Source: Macrostomum lignano
Lineage: Eukaryota
Direction: 5' to 3'
Length of the DNA stretch: 64,000 nucleotides
NCBI GenBank assembly: GCA_002269645.1
Contig: NIVC01002079.1
Coordinates: 142,640-206,639, forward strand
The translations under genes and the position numbers were made by a program. Under the pieces are notes generated by a model that did not search any database, was not told the origin of the DNA, and was given only the letters and a program-made list of their open reading frames with translations. Each line of letters starts with the position of its first letter. The stretch's first letter is position 1. Of the stretch, positions 7,262 to 53,944 are shown piece by piece.

Positions 7262-7556
7262 TCTGATGCTATCTCCGTTCAGCGGCGTCAGTCCGCACTT
7301 GTGGAAGACGATAACCGGACAGAAGCCGATTCCGGGTGTCCGAAAGCGGACGACCCAGTGTCCGAGACTGTCCGAGCTGACTCGGAGGAGTCGTGTTTAG
7401 TTGAAGGCGAAGAACTATCTAGCGAGTCGAGACAGCAGCAGTTTGCTAATCCACTGTTCGATTCGGATAGCGAGGGCGAAGATTCCGGCGGATTGGACGA
7501 GTTCGACGAGGAGATTCGAGCTGCTGTTGCTGCCGCCGCTGATCAGCCTGCTGAAG
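7262..7556 (+). CDS. Probable internal exon of an unidentified gene (acidic, SDAISVQRRQ...LFDSDSEGED...DQPAE)
   Basis: GC-rich open frame after acceptor atcttcag|, strong donor GAAG|GTGAGC at 7557, followed by a minisatellite-filled intron like other genes here. The upstream exon was not found and no family was recognised. Confidence 0.5.
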
Positions 7557-7559
7557 GTG

Positions 7560-8779
7560 AGCTGTCCTAATCCCATGGGGTGGGGGCTGAAAGTGATCTG
7601 TCTTTTTTAATCCCATGGGGTGGCTGTCCTAATCCCATGAGTGGCTGTCCTAATCCCATGGGGTGGCTGTCCTAATCCCATGGGGTGGGGGCTGAAAGTG
7701 ATCTGTCTTTTTTAATCCCATGGGGTGGCTGTCCTAATCCCATGAGTGGCTGTCCTAATCCCATGGGGTGGCTGTCCTAATCCCATGGGGTGGGGGCTGA
7801 AAGTGATCTGTCTTTTTTAATCCCATGGGGTGGCTGTCCTAATCCCATGGGGTAGGGGCTGAAAGTGATCTGTCTTTTTTAATCCCATGGGGTGGCTGTC
7901 CTAATCCAATCGGATGGCTGCCTTAATCCAATCGGATGGCTGTCTTAATCCCATAGGGTGGCTGTCTTAATCCAATCGGATGGCTGTCTTAATCCCATAG
8001 GGTGGCTGTCTTAATCCCATAGGGTGGCTGTCTTAATCCCATAGGGTGGCTGTCTTAATCCCATCGGGTGGCTGTCTTAATCCCATGGGGTGGCTGTCTT
8101 AATCCCATGGGGTGGCTGTCTTAATCCCATGGGGGTGGCTGTCTTAATCCCATAGGGTGGCTGTCTTAATCCCATGGGGGTGGCTGTCTTAATCCCATCG
8201 GGTGGCTGTCTTAATCCCATGGGGTGGCTGTCTTAATCCCATGGGGTGGCTGTCTTAATCCCATGGGGGTGGCTGTCTTAATCCCATAGGGTGGCTGTCT
8301 TAATCCCATAGGGTGGCTGTCTTAATCCCATAGGGTGGCTGTCTTAATCCCATAGGGTGGCTGTCTTAATCCCATCGGGTGGCTGTCTTAATCCCATGGG
8401 GTGGCTTTCTTAATCCCATGGGGTGGCTGTCTTAATCCCATGGGGGTGGCTGTCTTAATCCCATGGGGGTGGCTGTCTTAATCCCATAGGGTGGCTGTCT
8501 TAATCCCATGGGGGTGGCTGTCTTAATCCCATCGGGTGGCTGTCTTAATCCCATGGGGTGGCTGTCTTAATCCCATGGGGTGGCTGTCTTAATCCCATGG
8601 GGGTGGCTGTCTTAATCCCATAGGGTGGCTGTCTTAATCCCATAGGGTGGCTGTCTTAATCCCATCGGGTGGCTGTCTTAATCCCATGAGGGTGGCTGTC
8701 TTAATCCCACGGGGGTGGCTGTTTTGATCCCATAGGATGGCTGTCTTAATCCCACGGGGTGGCTGTTTTGATCCCATGG
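7560..8779. repeat. Intronic 22/23-bp minisatellite (TAATCCCATGGGGTGGCTGTCT)
   Basis: About 50 units; the first part is a 105-bp higher-order repeat. Confidence 0.95.
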
Positions 8780-8801
8780 AGAGCAGCTTGTGTGTGCTCA
8801 G

Positions 8802-8971
8802 CAGTCAGCGGAATGGGCAGAATCGCTTCAGCGCTGGTCGTGAGGAATGTCGCCAAAGGCGTTGCGCCAGGGTGCGCGCAGCCTTCCCCCGAATATTTAA
8901 TATTTGACTCCCACAATTCCAAGTGTCGCAAGTTCAAATCCCTGTATTACCTGAACTCGTACTGTCTATAA
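8802..8971 (+). CDS. Possible terminal exon of the same unidentified gene
   Basis: A cluster of acceptors (ctcag|cag|tcag|) follows the minisatellite. Phase-compatible frames end at 8971, or at about 8843 if the third AG is used. Ambiguous. Confidence 0.3.
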
Positions 8972-9170
8972 TTTAGATTGCAATCCACCATCAAGTCTGC
9001 CCGGAGAATCGGACCCAGCTTTCGATAGCAAAGTTGTTAGTACCAAGCACGCAGACGCTCCAGCGGCCTCCGTTGCCTGCACTCAATACAGAGTGGATTC
9101 GGGAGCAGTGGACCAGGCGGCGGTGGATCGCAGCGGTTCGCCGCTGTACCGCCACCCGAATCACCGGGAG

Positions 9171-9365
9171 ATGCTGTCGGCCATAGAGCTTGAGCTGGCT
9201 AACAATGACGAGCGAAACCTATGGCAGGACGCTTATAGACGATTGAGCCTGGCCTCGGGTTCGGACGGAGCTTCGTCTGCTCCGCTGAGCACGGCGGCTG
9301 CCAGGCATCCGGATAATCGGCTGCTCAACCGGTACCGCGACGTGCTGCCCTACGACCATAGCCGG
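9171..9365 (+). CDS. PTPN1: Non-receptor protein tyrosine phosphatase PTP1B/TC-PTP-like, exon 1
   Basis: MLSAIELEL...WQDAY aligns to the PTP1B N-terminus; pTyr-recognition loop NRYRDVLPYDHSR. Donor CGG|GTAAAA, phase 0. ATG at 9171 is preferred over the GTG start in the ORF track. Confidence 0.9.
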
Positions 9366-9469
9366 GTAAAACTGGCTTCAATATATTCTTGAATGCTGGC
9401 AATGATCTTGAATCCCCAGAATTGACTGCTTATGAATTAGATAATTTGATCAATCCTGACTGATCCCCG

Positions 9470-10050
9470 ACTTCCATAAGTCCCCAAATTATTTCCAAAT
9501 CCCATAATTCCCCAACAAGAACAGAACAACATAAATCCCCAAATTAATCCCAAATCCCATAAATCCCCGACAACAACAGAACAACATAAATCCCCAAATT
9601 ATTCCCAAATCCCATAAATCCCCAAATGATCCCTAAATCCCATTAATCCCCGAATGACCCCCAAATCCCATTAATCCCCAAATCCCCCAAATCCTCAAAT
9701 GACCCCCAAATTTCATAAATCCCCAAATGATCCTCGGATCCCATCTACCAAAAGAGCTTCACATTCATAATCCCTAAATAATACCCACATCATCTAATCT
9801 CCCAAATGATTCCAATTCCAGAATCCCCCAAATTATCCCAATTTCATAATCCCCCAAATTATCTCAAATACCATAGTCTCCCAAATTTTCTAAATTATCC
9901 ACAAATCCGATAATCCCCAAATGATCCCCACATCCGATTATCCCCGCATCCCATGATTTCCTAAATGATCCCTAAATCCCATAATCTCACAAATTATCCA
10001 AAAATCCCATCATTTCCCTAATGATCTCCAAAATCTATAATGTCCTAAAT
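9470..10050. repeat. Degenerate AAATCCC/CCCCAAAT-rich repeat in the PTP intron
   Basis: Recurrent aaatcccataaatcccc-like units; G nearly absent on the + strand. Confidence 0.8.
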
Positions 10051-10066
10051 GATATTTACTCTGTAG

Positions 10067-11248
10067 GTGCGGCTCTCCCCGATCAGCCGGTCGCACGCCA
10101 GCAGCCTGGGCCTGAGCGGGGATTACATCAATGCCAGCATAGTTCGAGCCGAGCACGCCGGCCGGGTGTTCGCCATGGCCCAGGGCCCTCTGCCGGCCAC
10201 GGTCGGCCACTTCTGGCTGATGGTGTGGCAGCTGCGCAGTCGCGGAGTCGTCATGCTCAATCGAGTATTTGAAAAAGGCGCCCTCAAATGTCATCCGTAT
10301 TTTCCGGACGAGCGAACGAAACGAGTCGATTGTCCGGACGTTGGCCTGCGAGTCGAGCTGGTCTCTTCCGAATCATTAGGCTATTACATTGTTCGCGGCT
10401 TCCGGTTGTCGTTGCTAAGCAATAAAACCAGCGATCCGGAGCCGGCGTCCGCAGTTCGAGACCTGCTGCACTATCAGTACTTGACTTGGCCGGATTTCGG
10501 GGTGCCGCAGACTCCGGGCGCTTTCCTGAACTTCCTGATGGCTGTCCGCCGTTCGGGCCTCCTGTCTGACCCGGACAGGCCGCCGGTTGTCCACTGCTCG
10601 GCCGGGATTGGCCGGACAGGCAGCCTGGCCGTCATAGACGTCTGCCTGGCTTTGATCGCCCGTCGTGGCAGCCTCTACGGAGTTGACCTGCCCGGCGAGA
10701 TCCGGCGCCTCCGCCGCGACCGCATGGGCCTGGTGCAGACGCCGGACCAGCTGCGGTTCTGCTACCAGGCCGTTGTCATGGGCGGCCGGGCGATACTGGC
10801 TAACGGAGTCGATCGGGCCGACAGTTTGTCGTTTAGCATCGACGAGGCCGACAGGCGACAATTCGGCATGGCTAATAACAGCTTCGCCGAGGCCGGCGAC
10901 TCTGATGACGAATCTTCTTCTAGTAGCAGCGGCGGCAGCAATCATTCTTCAGCAATAAACGATAACGCTTATAGTCTGTTGCGGGGTAACCTGGACAGGC
11001 AGAGGACCACCTGGCTGAGCTGCCAGCACAGGCTTAGCGGCGGTGGCGGCGGCGGCGTTCCATTTCCGCTGTACAATGAGGAAGACGAAGCTGCCGACGA
11101 CAAGAGGGCAGCAGCTGCGGGCGTCGATGCTGCTGAAGCCGCCTTCAAGCCGATTCCAACGCCTGTCGTTCGTCTGCGCGACCTGGCCTGGATCTCGCTG
11201 CTGACTGCCCTGGGCGCCTACCTGGTTTATCAGATGGGAGCAGCTTGA
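10067..11248 (+). CDS. PTPN1: PTP1B/TC-PTP-like, exon 2 (catalytic domain plus C-terminal membrane anchor); protein about 458 aa
   Basis: Acceptor ctctgtag|. Motifs DYINAS, QGPL, WPDFGVP (WPD loop), VHCSAGIGRTG (active site) and QTPDQLRF (Q loop). Hydrophobic tail WISLLTALGAYLVY resembles PTP1B LTAGAYLCY. Confidence 0.95.
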   Translation: MRLSPISRSHASSLGLSGDYINASIVRAEHAGRVFAMAQGPLPATVGHFWLMVWQLRSRGVVMLNRVFEKGALKCHPYFPDERTKRVDCPDVGLRVELVSSESLGYYIVRGFRLSLLSNKTSDPEPASAVRDLLHYQYLTWPDFGVPQTPGAFLNFLMAVRRSGLLSDPDRPPVVHCSAGIGRTGSLAVIDVCLALIARRGSLYGVDLPGEIRRLRRDRMGLVQTPDQLRFCYQAVVMGGRAILANGVDRADSLSFSIDEADRRQFGMANNSFAEAGDSDDESSSSSSGGSNHSSAINDNAYSLLRGNLDRQRTTWLSCQHRLSGGGGGGVPFPLYNEEDEAADDKRAAAAGVDAAEAAFKPIPTPVVRLRDLAWISLLTALGAYLVYQMGAA

Positions 11249-11494
11249 CTCTCTGCCAGCTGGTCGCTTTCACTCATTTTGAACATGTATCATTTTTTCG
11301 TTGATTTATAATATCAACTCGAGGTGTGCGCGCGTCTGTGTATGACTTTTTCCTCGGATCAAAAGATACTTGCATGTTTTTCAATGTTCTGTATGATAAA
11401 TATAAGCGAAAGTAGCCATAGAAACAACTCGATAAATTTATTGATTATTATTTCAGAATTTTAAGATGTGGGGACTTTAACCTTGCCTTGTGTG

Positions 11495-11635
11495 GTTGCT
11501 ATGCGGTATTACGGTTACTATGCGGTTGCTATGCGGTTGCTATGCGGTTGCTACGCTGTTGCTATGCGGTTGCTACGCGGTTGCTACGCTGTTGCAATGC
11601 GGTTGCTATGCGGTTGCTACGCAGTTGCTATGCAA
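11495..11635. repeat. 11-bp tandem repeat (GTTGCTATGCG)
   Basis: About 12 imperfect copies. Confidence 0.9.
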
Positions 11636-11819
11636 TTAAAATCTGTAATAAAATATTCTATGGCTTGGATGATGAGCTGGAATTTTATTAGACGGTGTAC
11701 GGCAAATCTCTGATATTAATGCCTGTCTTTTCTATGGTCTAAATACAATCTCTGCTTGGAATAATCATATTTATTATTGCTGTAATTTTAATTTTAATTT
11801 CCTTTCTGGTCATCCGCAG

Positions 11820-11840
11820 TTGCCGGATCTCTCTAGCCAG
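11820..11840 (+). other. Candidate 21-nt microexon
   Basis: Pyrimidine tract tttcctttctggtcatccgcag|TTGCCGGATCTCTCTAGCCAG|gtaaat in AT-rich flanks. Confidence 0.55.
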
Positions 11841-12294
11841 GTAAATAAAAAACTCACAAATAGTATTAATTTTGTAAATAATTATAAAATCCAGCGTCTT
11901 CTTGTGTGTCAGCCTGGAGCTTTTTCATATAGTCTTGCGACTAACGACCAATCAATCAATTTCTCTGCTTGTTGATGAATCTCTGTAATAAAAATACCAG
12001 ACCACATTTTTAGTATCGCTTTTCGTAACCCTGCTTTTGTAGCCTTTTTTGTCTTGTATACAGTTTTGTTTTAATAAGCAGGATCTTTTTTTCAACTCTA
12101 GCGAAAATTTGCGTCGTACTTTCGTTTGACTTTGTGTTTTTTAATGAAGTTTGAAATTAATACCGCGCTTGAGTCTTCTGCTATCGGAATTCTGTTTATT
12201 AATCTCATTTCTCGATGAGGATACAAGTCTTGGAGCTTCATTGCTTTTAACGGTTGTAATATCCACTCTTGCTGTAAATCCTTCCTTGCATTTC

Positions 12295-12595
12295 CCCCAT
12301 CTGTCTCTTGTCTTGCATCTCCCCTCCCCTCCATCTGTCTCTTATCTTGCATCTCCCCTCCCTCCATCTGTCTCTTATCTTGCATCCCCTCCCCTCCATC
12401 TGTCTCTTATCTTGCATCCCCTCCCCTCCATCTGTCTCTTATCTTGCATCCCCTCCCCTCCATCTGTCTCTTATCTTGCATCCCCTCCCCTCCATCTGTC
12501 TCTTATCTTGCATCCCCTCCCCTCCATCTGTCTCTTATCTTGGATCTCCCTCCATCTGTCTCTTACCTTGCATCTCCCCTCCATCTCTTGTGTTG
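12295..12595. repeat. 32-bp pyrimidine-rich minisatellite
   Basis: Unit ATCTTGCATCCCCTCCCCTCCATCTGTCTCTT, about 9 copies. Confidence 0.95.
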
Positions 12596-12702
12596 CACCT
12601 CTCAGGTCGCATATAAATTGTCTTTGATCTAGAGTATTAGTGCCTACTAATAGTAGAGTGCGCGTACATGTGTCAGTCACTCGCACACACTTCAGCAGAA
12701 GC

Positions 12703-12984
12703 ATGTCTACCCCAGAAGAGGCCTCGCCGGCAGCCTTCGAAGAAGAGTCCGCAGAGCCTGACGCCGATCCAGCACAATGGACTCCAGCTGGCGCAGAAAT
12801 CCGGCGCAGAAGCAAATCGGAGCGGTTGCGCCGAACCCAGGAACAGATCGATCGGATGCGAGCCAACATGAAGAACTGGGAGGTGAAACGGTGGCGAAAG
12901 CGGTGGTCAACTAGAATCGGTATTGCTGCGGCTATGCTGCTGTTTTCCGCTGGCTGCTACTACTTGTACTTTTACTACAGGTAG
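12703..12984 (+). CDS. 93-aa tail-anchored protein resembling the C-terminal basic region and TM of TC-PTP48
   Basis: Acceptor cacacttcag| just upstream. An acidic N-part, then IRRRSKSERLRRTQEQIDRMRANMKNWEVKRWRKRW, then the hydrophobic stretch IGIAAAMLLFSAGCYYLYFYY at the extreme C-terminus. Confidence 0.75.
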   Translation: MSTPEEASPAAFEEESAEPDADPAQWTPAGAEIRRRSKSERLRRTQEQIDRMRANMKNWEVKRWRKRWSTRIGIAAAMLLFSAGCYYLYFYYR

Positions 12985-13467
12985 TTGCGCGTTCCAGTGC
13001 TGGTGCGTTGTGTCCGCCAGCTAAGTGGTAGTAGATAAAAGAGTATTCGATATTGTTGCGTACGCGATATTAAAAAAAAAAGCGCTCCTCCGTGTTGCGC
13101 AAATACCGCTGCATTGGAAACCATCTGCTGCTGCCGATATGTATTGTAGTAATTGTTATGGCCCTGAGTTTCGACACTACTTGTTTATTGATTTTTCTCT
13201 CTCTTTCTGGAGTGGCTGCTGTCTGTATTTTCTATTAATTTTTAGTGTACTGTTCTTGAAATATAATTGAGTGTAGGCCAATTAGAAACTGTTTGCTTTA
13301 GTTTTTCATGTATTGCTAGTGTTGATTTTCTATTTTGTTTTACTGCCAAGTTTACTGCTGAGAGTACGAGTATACTTTAGAAAAAAGTACTATAGAGTCT
13401 AGGATTAAATAGAGACTCAATGGAAATATGACTGTAGAAGATCCATTCTGTCCATTCTAGAAGCCAA

Positions 13468-46324: not shown

Positions 46325-46620
46325 GTAAGCATTAGTTAAAGTGCATGCTTACTCAGCTCGTGTATGCATAGGTGGTGGCACTTTGTAACTGACGCCCCGG
46401 GGCCCCGGGTCTTGAAGCGCTCATCCCGCTTCGCTGCTGACCTCACGGATCCGTACACAGGCCCATTCTGCAGAGTGCAGCACAGTATAGTCTGGATGAT
46501 ATCCCTAGCGCCTACGTGCGCAAGCGTCAGACGTTGCTCCCTCCAGGTTGTAAAGAGAATAGCTAGCAGATAAAATCGAGTCTGGGACCACTCGCTAAAG
46601 AGAGCAATGCTAATCGGCAG

Positions 46621-47308
46621 GTTATCTGCGACGAAGGCTGCGAGCAACCGGCGGGGGCACATCGCTCGGCCGGGCCCTGCTCGGCCGGCTGAGGAAGCAG
46701 AGATCCGCCGGCGACATCGAGCAGCAGCAACAGCAAAAGCAGAAGCAGCAACAGCAACAGCAGCCGCAAGAGTCCCCATCGCCGTCACCGGGACCTCATC
46801 ATCAGCAGCAGCAGCAGCTGGACAAGCAAAAGCAGATCCGGCGTCGATTCCTCGGCCATCGATCCAGCTCAGTCCGCTCGGCCATCAGCGAACGAGCCTC
46901 CCCGGCGTCCGGGGCGTCGGTGTCGGCAGCCGGTAGCGGCGAGCTCAGAGCAGGCGAAGACGCAGAGTATGAGGAGCCCCTGGACCCGTCCGTGACTGAG
47001 GTGTTCTGCGGCGAGTGGAAGCAGGACCGGCGCTGCGGCCTGGGAGTCGCGGAGCGCAGCGACGGATTGAAATACGAAGGCGAATGGGAGGGCAACCGTC
47101 GCCATGGTTACGGGGCCACCACATTTCCGGACGGCAGCTGCGAGGCCGGAAAGTACAGGGGAAACTTGTTGAACGTGTCAACCGCCCGCCGAGGCCGGTT
47201 GTTCCTGTTGAAGAGCTCCCGGCTGAGGGAGAGAGTTGACACGGCGGTCAGGGAGGCTCGAGTGGCGATGGCCGAGGCTCTGAAACGGGCTGAGAATGCG
47301 CAGAGCAG
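46621..47308 (+). CDS. JPH: Junctophilin, exon 3 (joining region, MORN 7-8, start of alpha-helix)
   Basis: Acceptor taatcggcag|. GRLRKQRSAGDIE...RSSSVRSAIS...EVFCGEWKQDRRCGLGVAERSDGLKYEGEW. Donor AG|GTGAGT. Confidence 0.92.
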
Positions 47309-53350: not shown

Positions 53351-53944
53351 CTGCGCCTGCAGATTTGGGGATTGTATATTGAACTTTTTTTCACTGGGTG
53401 GTTGATTTTTTTGCTTCGATGTACATTTAGTAAGCCTAGTGAATTCAATACGGCAATAGTTTAGCTGTAAATTAATTTCAAGCGGCACTCAGACACCAGC
53501 GTTGTTCGATTCATAAAAGTACATTTCTTACGATCGAAAAGTTTACACATTTAATCATGAATTTTAGTCCAGTTAGAATCTGTTAGATAATCTTCTTAGA
53601 CTGGACTGACTCTGCTGGAAAGCCGAAAACTAAAAGAGTCTGCATCGGAGCATCGGATTGACAATTTCGACAGACTGGTCACGGAACATGACATGCTACT
53701 CTCCCTCTCTCTCCCAATCCCCCTAGTCCTAGCGTCACTGCTTGCTCAGTCCTTATAGAATAAGGACTGTTAAATATTTAATTATCTGCATAGTCCAGTT
53801 TTCTTGCTCGTCCCGCAAAGGATGAGAGAGTCGGTGCACGACGAAGAGCAGAACAGGTTGCCATGGCTGCTAATAGTATATCTTGTACTTGTGATTGGAT
53901 TTTGTAGTTTACTCTAGCCGCATTTCAACATCAGATAGACCTCC

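What the first reader, a model, noticed from the sequence alone, without database searches (positions are those of the whole stretch)
12703..12984. A TC-PTP48-like tail encoded separately, downstream of a PTP1B-like gene that already has its own anchor
IRRRSKSERLRRTQEQIDRMRANMKNWEVKRWRKRW aligns without gaps to human TC48 LRKRIREDRKATTAQKVQQMKQRLNENERKRKRWLY (sequence recalled from memory) and is likewise followed by a terminal TM segment. The upstream PTP ends in a PTP1B-like anchor. The locus may therefore hold two alternative tails (compare TC45/TC48 and Ptp61F m/n isoforms), or the tail may have split off as an independent 93-aa catalytically dead microprotein. I found no strong phase-2 donor in PTP exon 2, which favours a separate gene.
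Basis: partly seen in the sequence, partly recalled or inferred. Interest (0 to 1): 0.75.

Follow-up and report, generated by a model that had tools for sequence, protein, structure and literature searches.

The report
Phosphatase membrane tail encoded as separate gene
In the flatworm Macrostomum lignano, the ancient membrane-anchoring and self-inhibiting tail of a PTP1B/TC-PTP-type tyrosine phosphatase is an intact 93-residue reading frame 1.45 kb downstream of the phosphatase gene and is annotated as its own gene, so it may be a case of a regulatory tail split off from its enzyme.

Summary
Window 12703-12984 (+) is an intact 93-aa ORF with a disordered acidic N-terminus, a long basic helix and a C-terminal TM segment. 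It is homologous to the extreme C-terminal tail of PTPN1/PTPN2/Ptp61F-family phosphatases. The ORF alone hits the C-termini of PTPN1/2 proteins (best E 2.6e-10). An HMM of 47 orthologue tails finds only this ORF among 1106 reading-frame segments of the window (E 8e-11). The window is M. lignano contig NIVC01002079.1.

The one PTPN1/2 orthologue lies upstream, colinear and on the same strand. It ends at its own stop (11248) after a different, weakly hydrophobic C-terminus that has no significant similarity to family tails.

In Xenopus, an annelid and a trematode, the tail exon follows a phase-2 intron. The ORF also sits 7 nt behind a phase-2 acceptor (CTTCAG|C), which fits the published M. lignano spliced-leader acceptor motif. 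Exon 2 has no consensus donor. The transcript-based GenBank annotation starts a separate 5'-partial CDS exactly at that acceptor.

Most likely (about 0.55) the ancestral tail exon has become a separate, probably SL trans-spliced, tail-anchored microprotein gene. A cryptic alternative 3' exon and a transcribed relic are not excluded, because I had no RNA reads.

The parts
9171..9365 (+). First homologous coding exon of the PTPN1/2-type phosphatase. It starts at ATG 9171, carries the NRYRDVLPYDHSRV motif and ends at the donor CGG|GTAAAA (phase 0).
   Evidence: Exon mapping of UniRef M. lignano protein P0005. tblastn of orthologues starts at their residue 1 here. The GenBank model starts further upstream at 7262, which is doubtful.
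10067..11248 (+). Phosphatase exon 2. It holds the rest of the catalytic domain (WPD loop, HCSAGIGRTG, Q-loop), a roughly 150-aa linker, its own C-terminus and the TGA stop (11246-11248).
   Evidence: (Y_phosphatase 1.6e-54). GC is 0.58-0.64 against 0.33-0.38 in the flanks.
11183..11245 (+). The phosphatase's own C-terminal hydrophobic segment, LAWISLLTALGAYLVYQMGAA. It is a putative weak tail anchor and is not detectably homologous to the family tail.
   Evidence: Mean Kyte-Doolittle 1.35 over 19 aa. phmmer best E 0.13 to fish PTPN1 C-termini. Not hit by the orthologue-tail HMM.
11635..11652 (+). ATTAAA (11635) and AATAAA (11647). These are candidate poly(A) signals for the phosphatase mRNA. 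Further AATAAA copies lie at 11844 and 11987.
   Evidence: Pattern scan. Their use is inferred, not shown.
11820..11840 (+). It is open in the tail's frame but absent from the annotated CDS.
   Evidence: Sequence. The donor GTAAAT is listed. The annotated CDS begins at 12697, not here.
12297..12586 (.). A 32-nt x 9 tandem repeat in the spacer, just upstream of the acceptor.
   Evidence: TRF.
12690..12695 (+). Splice acceptor CTTCAG|C in phase 2. It matches the M. lignano SL trans-splice acceptor motif [T/C]TNCAG. The annotated transcript/CDS starts immediately after it.
   Evidence: Sequence. The annotated 95-aa CDS is 12697-12984. The motif comes from PMC8629364. The same intron phase is seen in orthologues.
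12703..12792 (+). Residues 1-30 of the ORF: ATG and an acidic segment predicted to be disordered (MSTPEEASPAAFEEESAEPDADPAQWTPAG).
12793..12909 (+). Residues 31-69: the conserved basic helix AEIRRRSKSERLRRTQEQIDRMRANMKNWEVKRWRKRWS. It is the counterpart of the TC-PTP 344-385 autoinhibitory/NLS segment.
   Evidence: Alignments. The function of the human segment comes from PMC8748766.
12916..12972 (+). Residues 72-90: transmembrane tail anchor IGIAAAMLLFSAGCYYLYF. It is followed by YYR and the TAG stop (12982-12984).
   Evidence: Hydropathy 1.69. Helix in blocks averaging pLDDT 95-97. Aligned to orthologue TM segments.
13069..13074 (+). ATTAAA 85 nt after the stop. This is a candidate poly(A) signal for the tail mRNA.
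   Evidence: Pattern scan. Inferred only.

Best explanation
The 93-aa ORF is the ancestral terminal 'tail' exon of the PTPN1/PTPN2-family phosphatase gene that lies just upstream. That exon encodes a basic regulatory helix plus an ER-type tail anchor.

In M. lignano the phosphatase coding sequence no longer runs into it. Exon 2 continues through the linker to its own stop and has no consensus 5' splice site. The old acceptor is therefore left without a cis donor. In an organism with spliced-leader (SL) trans-splicing, such an acceptor is by default a trans-splice site.

The exon is then processed as the 5' end of a separate mRNA. That mRNA is probably the downstream member of a two-gene transcription unit with the phosphatase. 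Its first genomic AUG, 7 nt after the acceptor, opens a stand-alone 93-residue tail-anchored protein.

Shown: the homology, the colinearity, the intron phase, the absence of a consensus donor, the separate annotated CDS starting at the acceptor, the coding-like base composition and the helix-plus-TM architecture.

Inferred: SL trans-splicing at 12696, translation from ATG 12703, and insertion into the ER membrane.

By analogy only: the basic helix may bind and regulate or dock the phosphatase catalytic domain in trans. The homologous human TC-PTP segment 344-385 does this in vitro.
For: Homology:
- phmmer of the ORF alone against 120 PTPN1/2 proteins gives E 2.6e-10 to 2.4e-4, always at their C-termini.
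- An HMM of 47 orthologue tails (no M. lignano sequence) against 1106 stop-to-stop segments of the window hits only 12628-12981, at E 8.2e-11. The next best is 0.22.
- tblastn of scallop PTPN1-like residues 423-478 lands on 12775-12942, E 2.7e-7.
- BLASTP against lizard PTPN2 gives E 4e-7.

Colinearity: there is only one PTP catalytic domain in the window. It is upstream, on the same strand and in the orthologous order.

Intron phase: the last intron is phase 2 in the annelid and the trematode and in Xenopus PTPN2. By their acceptors it is also phase 2 in metagenomic exon fragments L003 and L004. The M. lignano acceptor at 12695|12696 is phase 2.

Separate mRNA:
- The GenBank annotation of both genome copies gives a separate 95-aa 5'-partial CDS starting at 12697.
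- The annotation pipeline cuts transcription units at experimentally mapped SL sites and calls ORFs with TransDecoder (PMC5730564).
- The acceptor CTTCAG fits [T/C]TNCAG, and an acceptor without a cis donor is trans-spliced by default (PMC8629364).
- There is no GT[AG]AG anywhere in 10067-12695. The best phase-2 GT in the linker is CT|GTACAA.
- Two independent gene models end the phosphatase at 11248.

Coding-like state: GC is 0.57 and GC3 is 0.69 in the motif+TM part, against 0.33-0.38 in the flanks. The ORF is intact up to the homologous C-terminus.

Trans activity of the homologous human segment: PMC8748766.
Against: - I had no RNA reads, so SL trans-splicing at 12696 is inferred from the annotation's boundary and not seen directly.
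- The M. lignano SL ends in ATG. Spliced at 12696, that ATG is out of frame and opens a 22-codon uORF overlapping ATG 12703 (read directly). This could depress translation of the 93-aa ORF.
- The two genome copies are 99-100% identical across exons, introns and spacer alike, so there is no test of purifying selection.
- No stand-alone homologue exists elsewhere. The only small relatives in 1.8 billion representatives are terminal-exon fragments on 1-kb metagenome contigs.
- The spacer (1447 nt from stop to acceptor) meets the published <1 kb operon criterion only after subtracting an assumed 3'UTR and the tandem repeat.
Confidence: 0.55

Rival explanations
1. Alternative (or the true canonical) 3' exon. 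A non-consensus phase-2 donor in the exon-2 linker is cis-spliced to 12696. That would give a phosphatase isoform with the ancestral TC48-type tail alongside the annotated read-through isoform, in the manner of TC45/TC48 or Ptp61F m/n.
For: Every other PTPN1/2-family member retrieved carries this tail on the same polypeptide. The acceptor phase equals the conserved last-intron phase. The frame is open from the acceptor. A phase-2 GT exists at 11071 (CCGCT|GTACAA), and using it would even preserve the Leu codon (the sequence is). The out-of-frame SL ATG is no problem under this model.
Against: There is no GT[AG]AG or GT[AG]A donor in phase 2 anywhere in exon 2; 65% of M. lignano donors are GT[GA]AG. 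Neither annotation contains such an isoform. The transcript-based model starts at the acceptor with no upstream exon. The composition of 11072-11245 is exon-like rather than intron-like.
Confidence: 0.2
2. Relic exon. The tail exon was recently orphaned when the phosphatase acquired its own stop. It is still transcribed, and perhaps SL-spliced, as a by-product of read-through, but it makes little or no functional protein.
For: The SL ATG would be out of frame and would open an overlapping uORF. No stand-alone relatives exist in any other organism. There is no measurable constraint between the two genome copies.
Against: The ORF is intact over 118 sense codons and ends at the homologous position. 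Nearly all family-consensus residues are retained (E32, R34-R36, E40-R41, T45, Q48, M52, E60 and the K/R cluster before the TM). It keeps exon-like GC and GC3 in an AT-rich spacer. It has a genomic ATG 7 nt after the acceptor.
Confidence: 0.2
3. Chance resemblance: an unrelated basic, tail-anchored small ORF.
For: Pfam has no family for it. Basic helices align easily. A coiled-coil giant protein (P0002) scored spuriously in the exhaustive search.
Against: The reciprocal, compositionally corrected tests are significant and specific to the C-termini of PTPN1/2 proteins. So are the location next to the only PTPN1/2 gene and the shared intron phase.
Confidence: 0.02

Closest known systems
C-terminal tail of TC-PTP/PTPN2 isoform TC48 and of invertebrate PTPN1/2 (Ptp61F-type) phosphatases
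   Same: The sequence module is homologous: E[IL]RRRxxEER..T..Q[IV]..M[KR]...E..[KR]-rich, then a TM segment ending within a few residues of the stop. Like the Xenopus, annelid and trematode tail exons, it is a terminal coding segment behind a phase-2 acceptor, and in the genome it lies downstream of the catalytic exons.
   Different: Here it is not part of the annotated phosphatase polypeptide, and no consensus donor links it. It has its own ATG and a 30-residue acidic N-terminus. It lacks the conserved Pro before the TM and has a 2-residue insertion in the basic cluster.
TC45/TC48 (human PTPN2) and Ptp61Fm/Ptp61Fn (Drosophila) alternative 3' ends (established knowledge; TC45/TC48 also in PMC8748766)
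   Same: One locus offers two different C-termini for a PTPN1/2-type phosphatase. One of them is the hydrophobic ER anchor.
   Different: In those genes both ends are joined to the catalytic domain by cis-splicing. Here, both candidate ends are hydrophobic and the second has no detectable donor upstream.
TC-PTP autoinhibitory segment 344-385 acting in trans (PMC8748766)
   Same: The M. lignano basic helix aligns to this segment. The human peptide binds the catalytic domain and inhibits it when supplied as a separate molecule.
   Different: The human experiment is in vitro, with a soluble fragment. The catalytic-domain loop L1 residues used in human TC-PTP are not obviously conserved in the M. 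lignano enzyme (by eye, from the sequence). No binding was tested.
SL trans-spliced downstream genes of M. lignano transcription units/operons (PMC5730564, PMC8629364)
   Same: Same-strand neighbour. The acceptor fits the [T/C]TNCAG motif. The gene model starts at the acceptor. The upstream gene has its own poly(A) signals. The spacer is repeat-rich.
   Different: SL reads at this site were not seen by me. The raw spacer is 1447 nt from stop to acceptor, above the 1-kb repeat-adjusted threshold unless the 3'UTR and the 290-nt repeat are subtracted.

Membership tests
PTPN1/PTPN2/Ptp61F C-terminal tail module (TC48-type) | Significant sequence similarity to the tails of family members | tested here: met
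   phmmer gives E 2.6e-10 to 2.4e-4 against 120 family proteins. The orthologue-tail HMM gives E 8.2e-11 and a unique hit in the window. BLASTP gives E 4e-7.
PTPN1/PTPN2/Ptp61F C-terminal tail module (TC48-type) | Basic helix followed by a single TM segment at the extreme C-terminus | tested here: met
   Hydropathy is 1.69 for residues 72-90, with 3 residues after it. AF2 gives one helix for residues 28-92.
PTPN1/PTPN2/Ptp61F C-terminal tail module (TC48-type) | Encoded by the terminal exon behind a phase-2 intron | tested here: met
   The acceptor at 12695|12696 is phase 2. Phase 2 is also found in the annelid, the trematode and Xenopus and in L003 and L004. The distance from the acceptor to the motif is 33 codons here, against 2-3 in the annelid, Xenopus and the fragments, and about 100 in the trematode.
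PTPN1/PTPN2/Ptp61F C-terminal tail module (TC48-type) | Covalently continuous with the phosphatase catalytic domain (same mRNA and polypeptide) | tested here: inconclusive
   There is no consensus donor. Both annotations end the PTP at 11248, and the tail is a separate CDS. I had no RNA reads to exclude a minor isoform.
PTPN1/PTPN2/Ptp61F C-terminal tail module (TC48-type) | ER targeting, and autoinhibition of or binding to the catalytic domain | not testable with these tools
   Rests only on analogy to PMC8748766.
Alternative 3'-exon isoforms (TC45/TC48, Ptp61F m/n type) | A usable 5' splice site of compatible phase in the upstream coding exon | tested here: not met
   The best phase-2 GTs are CT|GTACAA (11071) and TT|GTCGTT (10828). 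The only GT[AG]A is at 10986, in phase 1.
Tail-anchored membrane proteins | No N-terminal signal or TM; a single TM within about 30 residues of the C-terminus | tested here: met
   The N-terminus is acidic and disordered, and the only hydrophobic segment is residues 72-90 of 93.
SL trans-spliced gene in an M. lignano transcription unit | SL-containing reads ending at the acceptor | not testable with these tools
   Only indirect support: the model's 5' end is at the acceptor, and the pipeline (TBONE) cuts at SL peaks.
SL trans-spliced gene in an M. lignano transcription unit | Acceptor motif [T/C]TNCAG and a repeat-adjusted spacer under 1 kb to the same-strand upstream gene | tested here: inconclusive
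   The motif is met (CTTCAG), but it is frequent: 135 copies on the + strand of the window. The spacer is about 735 nt only if the PTP mRNA ends near the 11647 AATAAA and the 290-nt repeat is subtracted.

The most novel reading that the evidence does not exclude
Loss of the cis 5' splice site turned the phosphatase's last acceptor into an SL trans-splice site. That split an ancient autoinhibitory and ER-anchoring tail from its enzyme. The tail now works as a stand-alone, membrane-anchored 93-residue subunit that binds the catalytic domain in trans and inhibits it or docks it at the ER. This would be a natural 'split' version of TC48, and an example of gene fission made easy by SL trans-splicing.
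Probability: 0.25. Interest if true: 0.75.

Novelty: new variant of a known kind. Interest (0 to 1): 0.55.

Why it matters
The TC-PTP/PTP1B tails decide where these phosphatases sit and, for TC-PTP, how active they are. These enzymes are major regulators of insulin, JAK/STAT and growth-factor signalling.

A natural case in which the conserved tail is made as a separate tail-anchored protein would give three things:
- An in vivo test of regulation in trans by the tail, in an animal where transgenesis works.
- A concrete example of how SL trans-splicing can turn loss of a splice donor into gene fission.
- Evidence that the basic motif plus anchor, known from vertebrate TC48, dates back at least to the bilaterian ancestor with a conserved phase-2 intron. 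This last point already follows from the comparisons made here.

If instead it proves to be a cryptic alternative exon or a relic, the value is limited to correcting the annotation of one gene.

Tried and rejected
1. Pfam scan of the ORF: only sub-threshold DUF hits.
2. Word-indexed searches of 5.8 billion proteins, with the ORF and with a 3-sequence profile, found only the ORF itself and two fragments. Those searches demand E<=10 on a database of 5.8 billion, so the family link appeared only when PTPN1/2 proteins were fetched through the catalytic domain and searched locally.
3. The exhaustive phmmer search gave a spurious 25-stretch hit to a 4364-aa coiled-coil protein (P0002), which I rejected as repeat and compositional.
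4. A PDB profile search gave no phosphatase hits, only septin, MacA and CFTR noise at E>0.2.
5. Comparing the two genome copies for purifying selection had no power. Exons, intron and spacer are all 99-100% identical.
6. I tried to locate the ancestral donor by aligning linkers with flatworm and other orthologues. The linkers are not alignable. A short resemblance (trematode PAVRD|R against M. lignano PVVRLRD, just before the hydrophobic end) is too weak to use.
7. The mini-exon 11820-11840 is open in frame but absent from the annotated CDS, and it would still need a phase-2 donor upstream.
8. The donor at 10986 (phase 1) spliced to 12696 would read the +1 frame, giving a soluble tail with an NLS-like ...PQKRPRRQPSKKSP.... 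I noted it as a curiosity without support.
9. Weak HMM hits at 46574-46933 and 53774-53914 (E 0.2-0.3) were inspected and dismissed as chance.
10. The exon-2 anchor as a homologue of PTP1B's anchor: not significant.

Full report
**Where the window comes from.** The 95-aa database protein identical to the ORF lies on two contigs of assembly GCA_002269645.1 (NIVC01002079.1 and NIVC01000647.1). Locus L002 is the window itself (window = L002 + 2696). NIVC is, to my knowledge, the Macrostomum lignano Mlig_3_7 assembly. This agrees with the 99%-identical UniRef protein of M. lignano for the upstream gene. The second contig is a near-identical copy, as expected from the duplicated large chromosome of the DV1 line (PMC8629364).

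**The observation.** Window 12703-12984 (+) is an ATG-to-TAG ORF of 93 codons. The peptide has three parts:
- An acidic N-terminal 30 residues.
- A 19-residue hydrophobic segment at 72-90, three residues from the end (mean Kyte-Doolittle 1.69).

AlphaFold2 with an 18-sequence alignment predicts residues 28-92 as one continuous helix (blocks from residue 41 average pLDDT 91-97) and the N-terminus as disordered.

I could not check the recalled human sequence. Real PTPN2 tails from lizard, Xenopus and coelacanth carry the same motif and score alike. BLASTP against lizard PTPN2 gives E = 4e-7, at residues 343-417 of 422.

**Is it really the PTPN1/2 tail?** The large-database searches were nearly empty.
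- The word-indexed search found only the ORF itself.
- The exhaustive phmmer search of 1.8 billion representatives found, besides a spurious coiled-coil giant, only two small proteins at E about 4e-4 and 9e-4.
- Those two lie on 1-kb metagenome contigs.
- In both contigs the similarity begins immediately after a splice acceptor (TTTGCAG|A and TTCTAG|G), with the first exon base completing a codon. They are therefore terminal exons of eukaryotic genes, not small genes.

I then fetched 120 PTPN1/PTPN2/Ptp61F-family proteins through the catalytic domain and searched them locally.
- The M. lignano ORF alone hits their extreme C-termini. E-values are 2.6e-10 for scallop-like proteins, 3.7e-7 for an annelid, and 4.9e-6 to 2.4e-4 for vertebrate PTPN2 (shark, lizard, coelacanth); cockroach PTPN2-like proteins are weaker (E 1.8e-3).
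- The reciprocal test used an HMM of 47 orthologue tails with no M. lignano or metagenome sequence, run against all 1106 stop-to-stop segments of at least 30 aa in the window. It finds only 12628-12981, at E = 8.2e-11. The next best is 0.22.
- tblastn with whole orthologues shows one catalytic domain in the window (9171-9374 and 10118-10867). It also places the tail at 12775-12942, on the same strand and in the orthologous order.

The homology is therefore established. The ORF is best read as the ancestral tail exon of this very gene.

**The upstream gene.**
- It has the full set of catalytic motifs and a Pfam Y_phosphatase hit of 1.6e-54.
- Its nearest solved single-domain relatives are PTP1B, and its nearest database relatives are all PTPN1/PTPN2/Ptp61F.
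- Two independent gene models, the 621-aa GenBank model and the 458-aa UniRef model, end at the same stop, 11246-11248.
- Its last 21 residues (LAWISLLTALGAYLVYQMGAA) are moderately hydrophobic (1.35).
- Their similarity to PTPN1 anchors is not significant (E 0.13), and the orthologue-tail HMM does not hit them.

The enzyme thus ends in a different, weaker putative anchor and lacks the family's basic motif.

**Gene structure in relatives.** The intron before the tail exon is phase 2 in every case examined:
- Annelid Lamellibrachia: GA|GTGAGT ... TTGTAG|G.
- Trematode Calicophoron: AG|GTAATA ... TTTTAG|G.
- Xenopus PTPN2: AG|GTAATA ... ATCTAG|T.

In the annelid, Xenopus and the two fragments the intron sits 2-3 codons before the motif. 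In the trematode it is about 100 codons upstream. The M. lignano acceptor CTTCAG|C (12690-12695|12696) is also phase 2 and lies 33 codons before the motif.

**Joined or separate?**
- Exon 2 has no GT[AG]AG. The whole interval 10067-12695 has none either.
- The M. lignano donor consensus is GT[G/A]AG (PMC8629364), and this gene's own first intron uses GTAAAA.
- The only phase-2 GTs in the linker are very poor (CT|GTACAA at 11071 and TT|GTCGTT at 10828).
- The base composition steps sharply. GC is 0.58-0.64 through to the exon-2 stop, 0.33-0.38 in the spacer, 0.57 in the ORF (GC3 0.69 in the motif+TM part), and 0.38 after it. Both the exon-2 end and the ORF therefore look like coding exons.
- The spacer contains ATTAAA/AATAAA at 11635/11647 and two tandem-repeat arrays.
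- The GenBank annotation gives the tail as a separate gene. Its CDS is 5'-partial and starts at 12697, the first in-frame codon after the acceptor.
- That annotation was made by cutting transcription units at experimentally mapped SL trans-splice peaks and poly(A) sites, then calling ORFs with TransDecoder (PMC5730564).
- The acceptor fits the published SL acceptor motif [T/C]TNCAG. An acceptor with no cis donor upstream is what makes a site SL trans-spliced (PMC8629364).

Together these points favour a separate, SL trans-spliced mRNA, probably processed from a transcript shared with the phosphatase.

**Caveats.**
- I saw no reads.
- The 35-nt SL ends in ATG. Spliced at 12696, that ATG is out of frame and opens a 22-codon uORF overlapping ATG 12703 (from the sequences), so translation of the ORF may be inefficient.
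- The two genome copies are too similar to test for selection.
- No stand-alone homologue exists elsewhere.

**Mechanism proposed.** Shown: the M. lignano locus encodes a catalytically complete PTPN1/2 enzyme without the ancestral tail. It also encodes, 1.45 kb downstream, the ancestral tail as an intact reading frame with its own ATG. Inferred: the tail is made as a tail-anchored ER-type membrane protein.

By analogy, in human TC-PTP the homologous residues 344-385 form the autoinhibitory domain. That domain binds the back and N-terminal surfaces of the catalytic domain. It does so, and inhibits, even when added in trans (PMC8748766). The M. lignano microprotein could therefore act as a membrane-bound trans regulator or docking partner of the phosphatase.

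**Rivals.** One is a cryptic alternative 3' exon (0.2) and the other a recently orphaned relic exon (0.2). Chance similarity is excluded for practical purposes.

**Verdict.** The choice between a separate gene and an alternative exon leans towards a separate gene but needs RNA evidence. It is a new variant of a known kind: the TC48-type tail, here detached from its enzyme. Interest is moderate (0.55). It would be higher if the split tail proves functional.

Noticed in passing
window 7262-9170: The GenBank model of the phosphatase (621 aa) starts at 7262. All orthologues align from their residue 1 at ATG 9171, which matches the 458-aa UniRef model. The extra 163 residues run through a self-similar repeat region (about 7556-8779) and look like an annotation artefact.
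   Followed up: partly
window 9474-10053: Intron 1 of the phosphatase gene is almost entirely tandem repeats of CCCAAAT-like units, with periods of 17-73.
   Followed up: no
window 11494-11633 and 12297-12586: Two tandem arrays lie in the spacer between the phosphatase stop and the tail ORF: an 11-nt x 13 array and a 32-nt x 9 array. The copy number of the second differs between the two genome copies.
   Followed up: partly
window 13467 to about 14900: Long 23/45/68-nt tandem repeats produce 200-350-aa spurious ORFs in all six frames, just downstream of the tail gene.
   Followed up: no
window 12668-12871 (+1 frame of the tail exon): The overlapping frame is open for 67 codons and contains an NLS-like PQKRPRRQPSKKSP. 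It would be read if the only GT[AG]A donor of exon 2 (10986, phase 1) were spliced to 12696. There is no evidence that this happens.
   Followed up: partly
L007 23568-23621 (Xenopus tropicalis PTPN2-like model P0082): There is an extra internal mini-exon encoding SLVRRRQQEDRKASTAQK. It is a partial duplicate of the start of the tail exon and also follows a phase-2 intron. It could be an alternative tail exon or an annotation chimera.
   Followed up: no
L003 271-495 and L004 574-780: Two 'hypothetical proteins' called on 1-kb metagenome contigs are really terminal exons of invertebrate PTPN1/2 genes. Each starts at a splice acceptor, and prokaryote-style gene calling gave them false starts.
   Followed up: yes
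window 46574-46933 and 53774-53914: These are weak matches (E 0.2-0.3) of the tail HMM to EEAEIRRRHRAAA and to QRMRESVHDEEQNRLPWLLIVYLVLVIGFCS. I judged them to be chance on inspection.
   Followed up: partly
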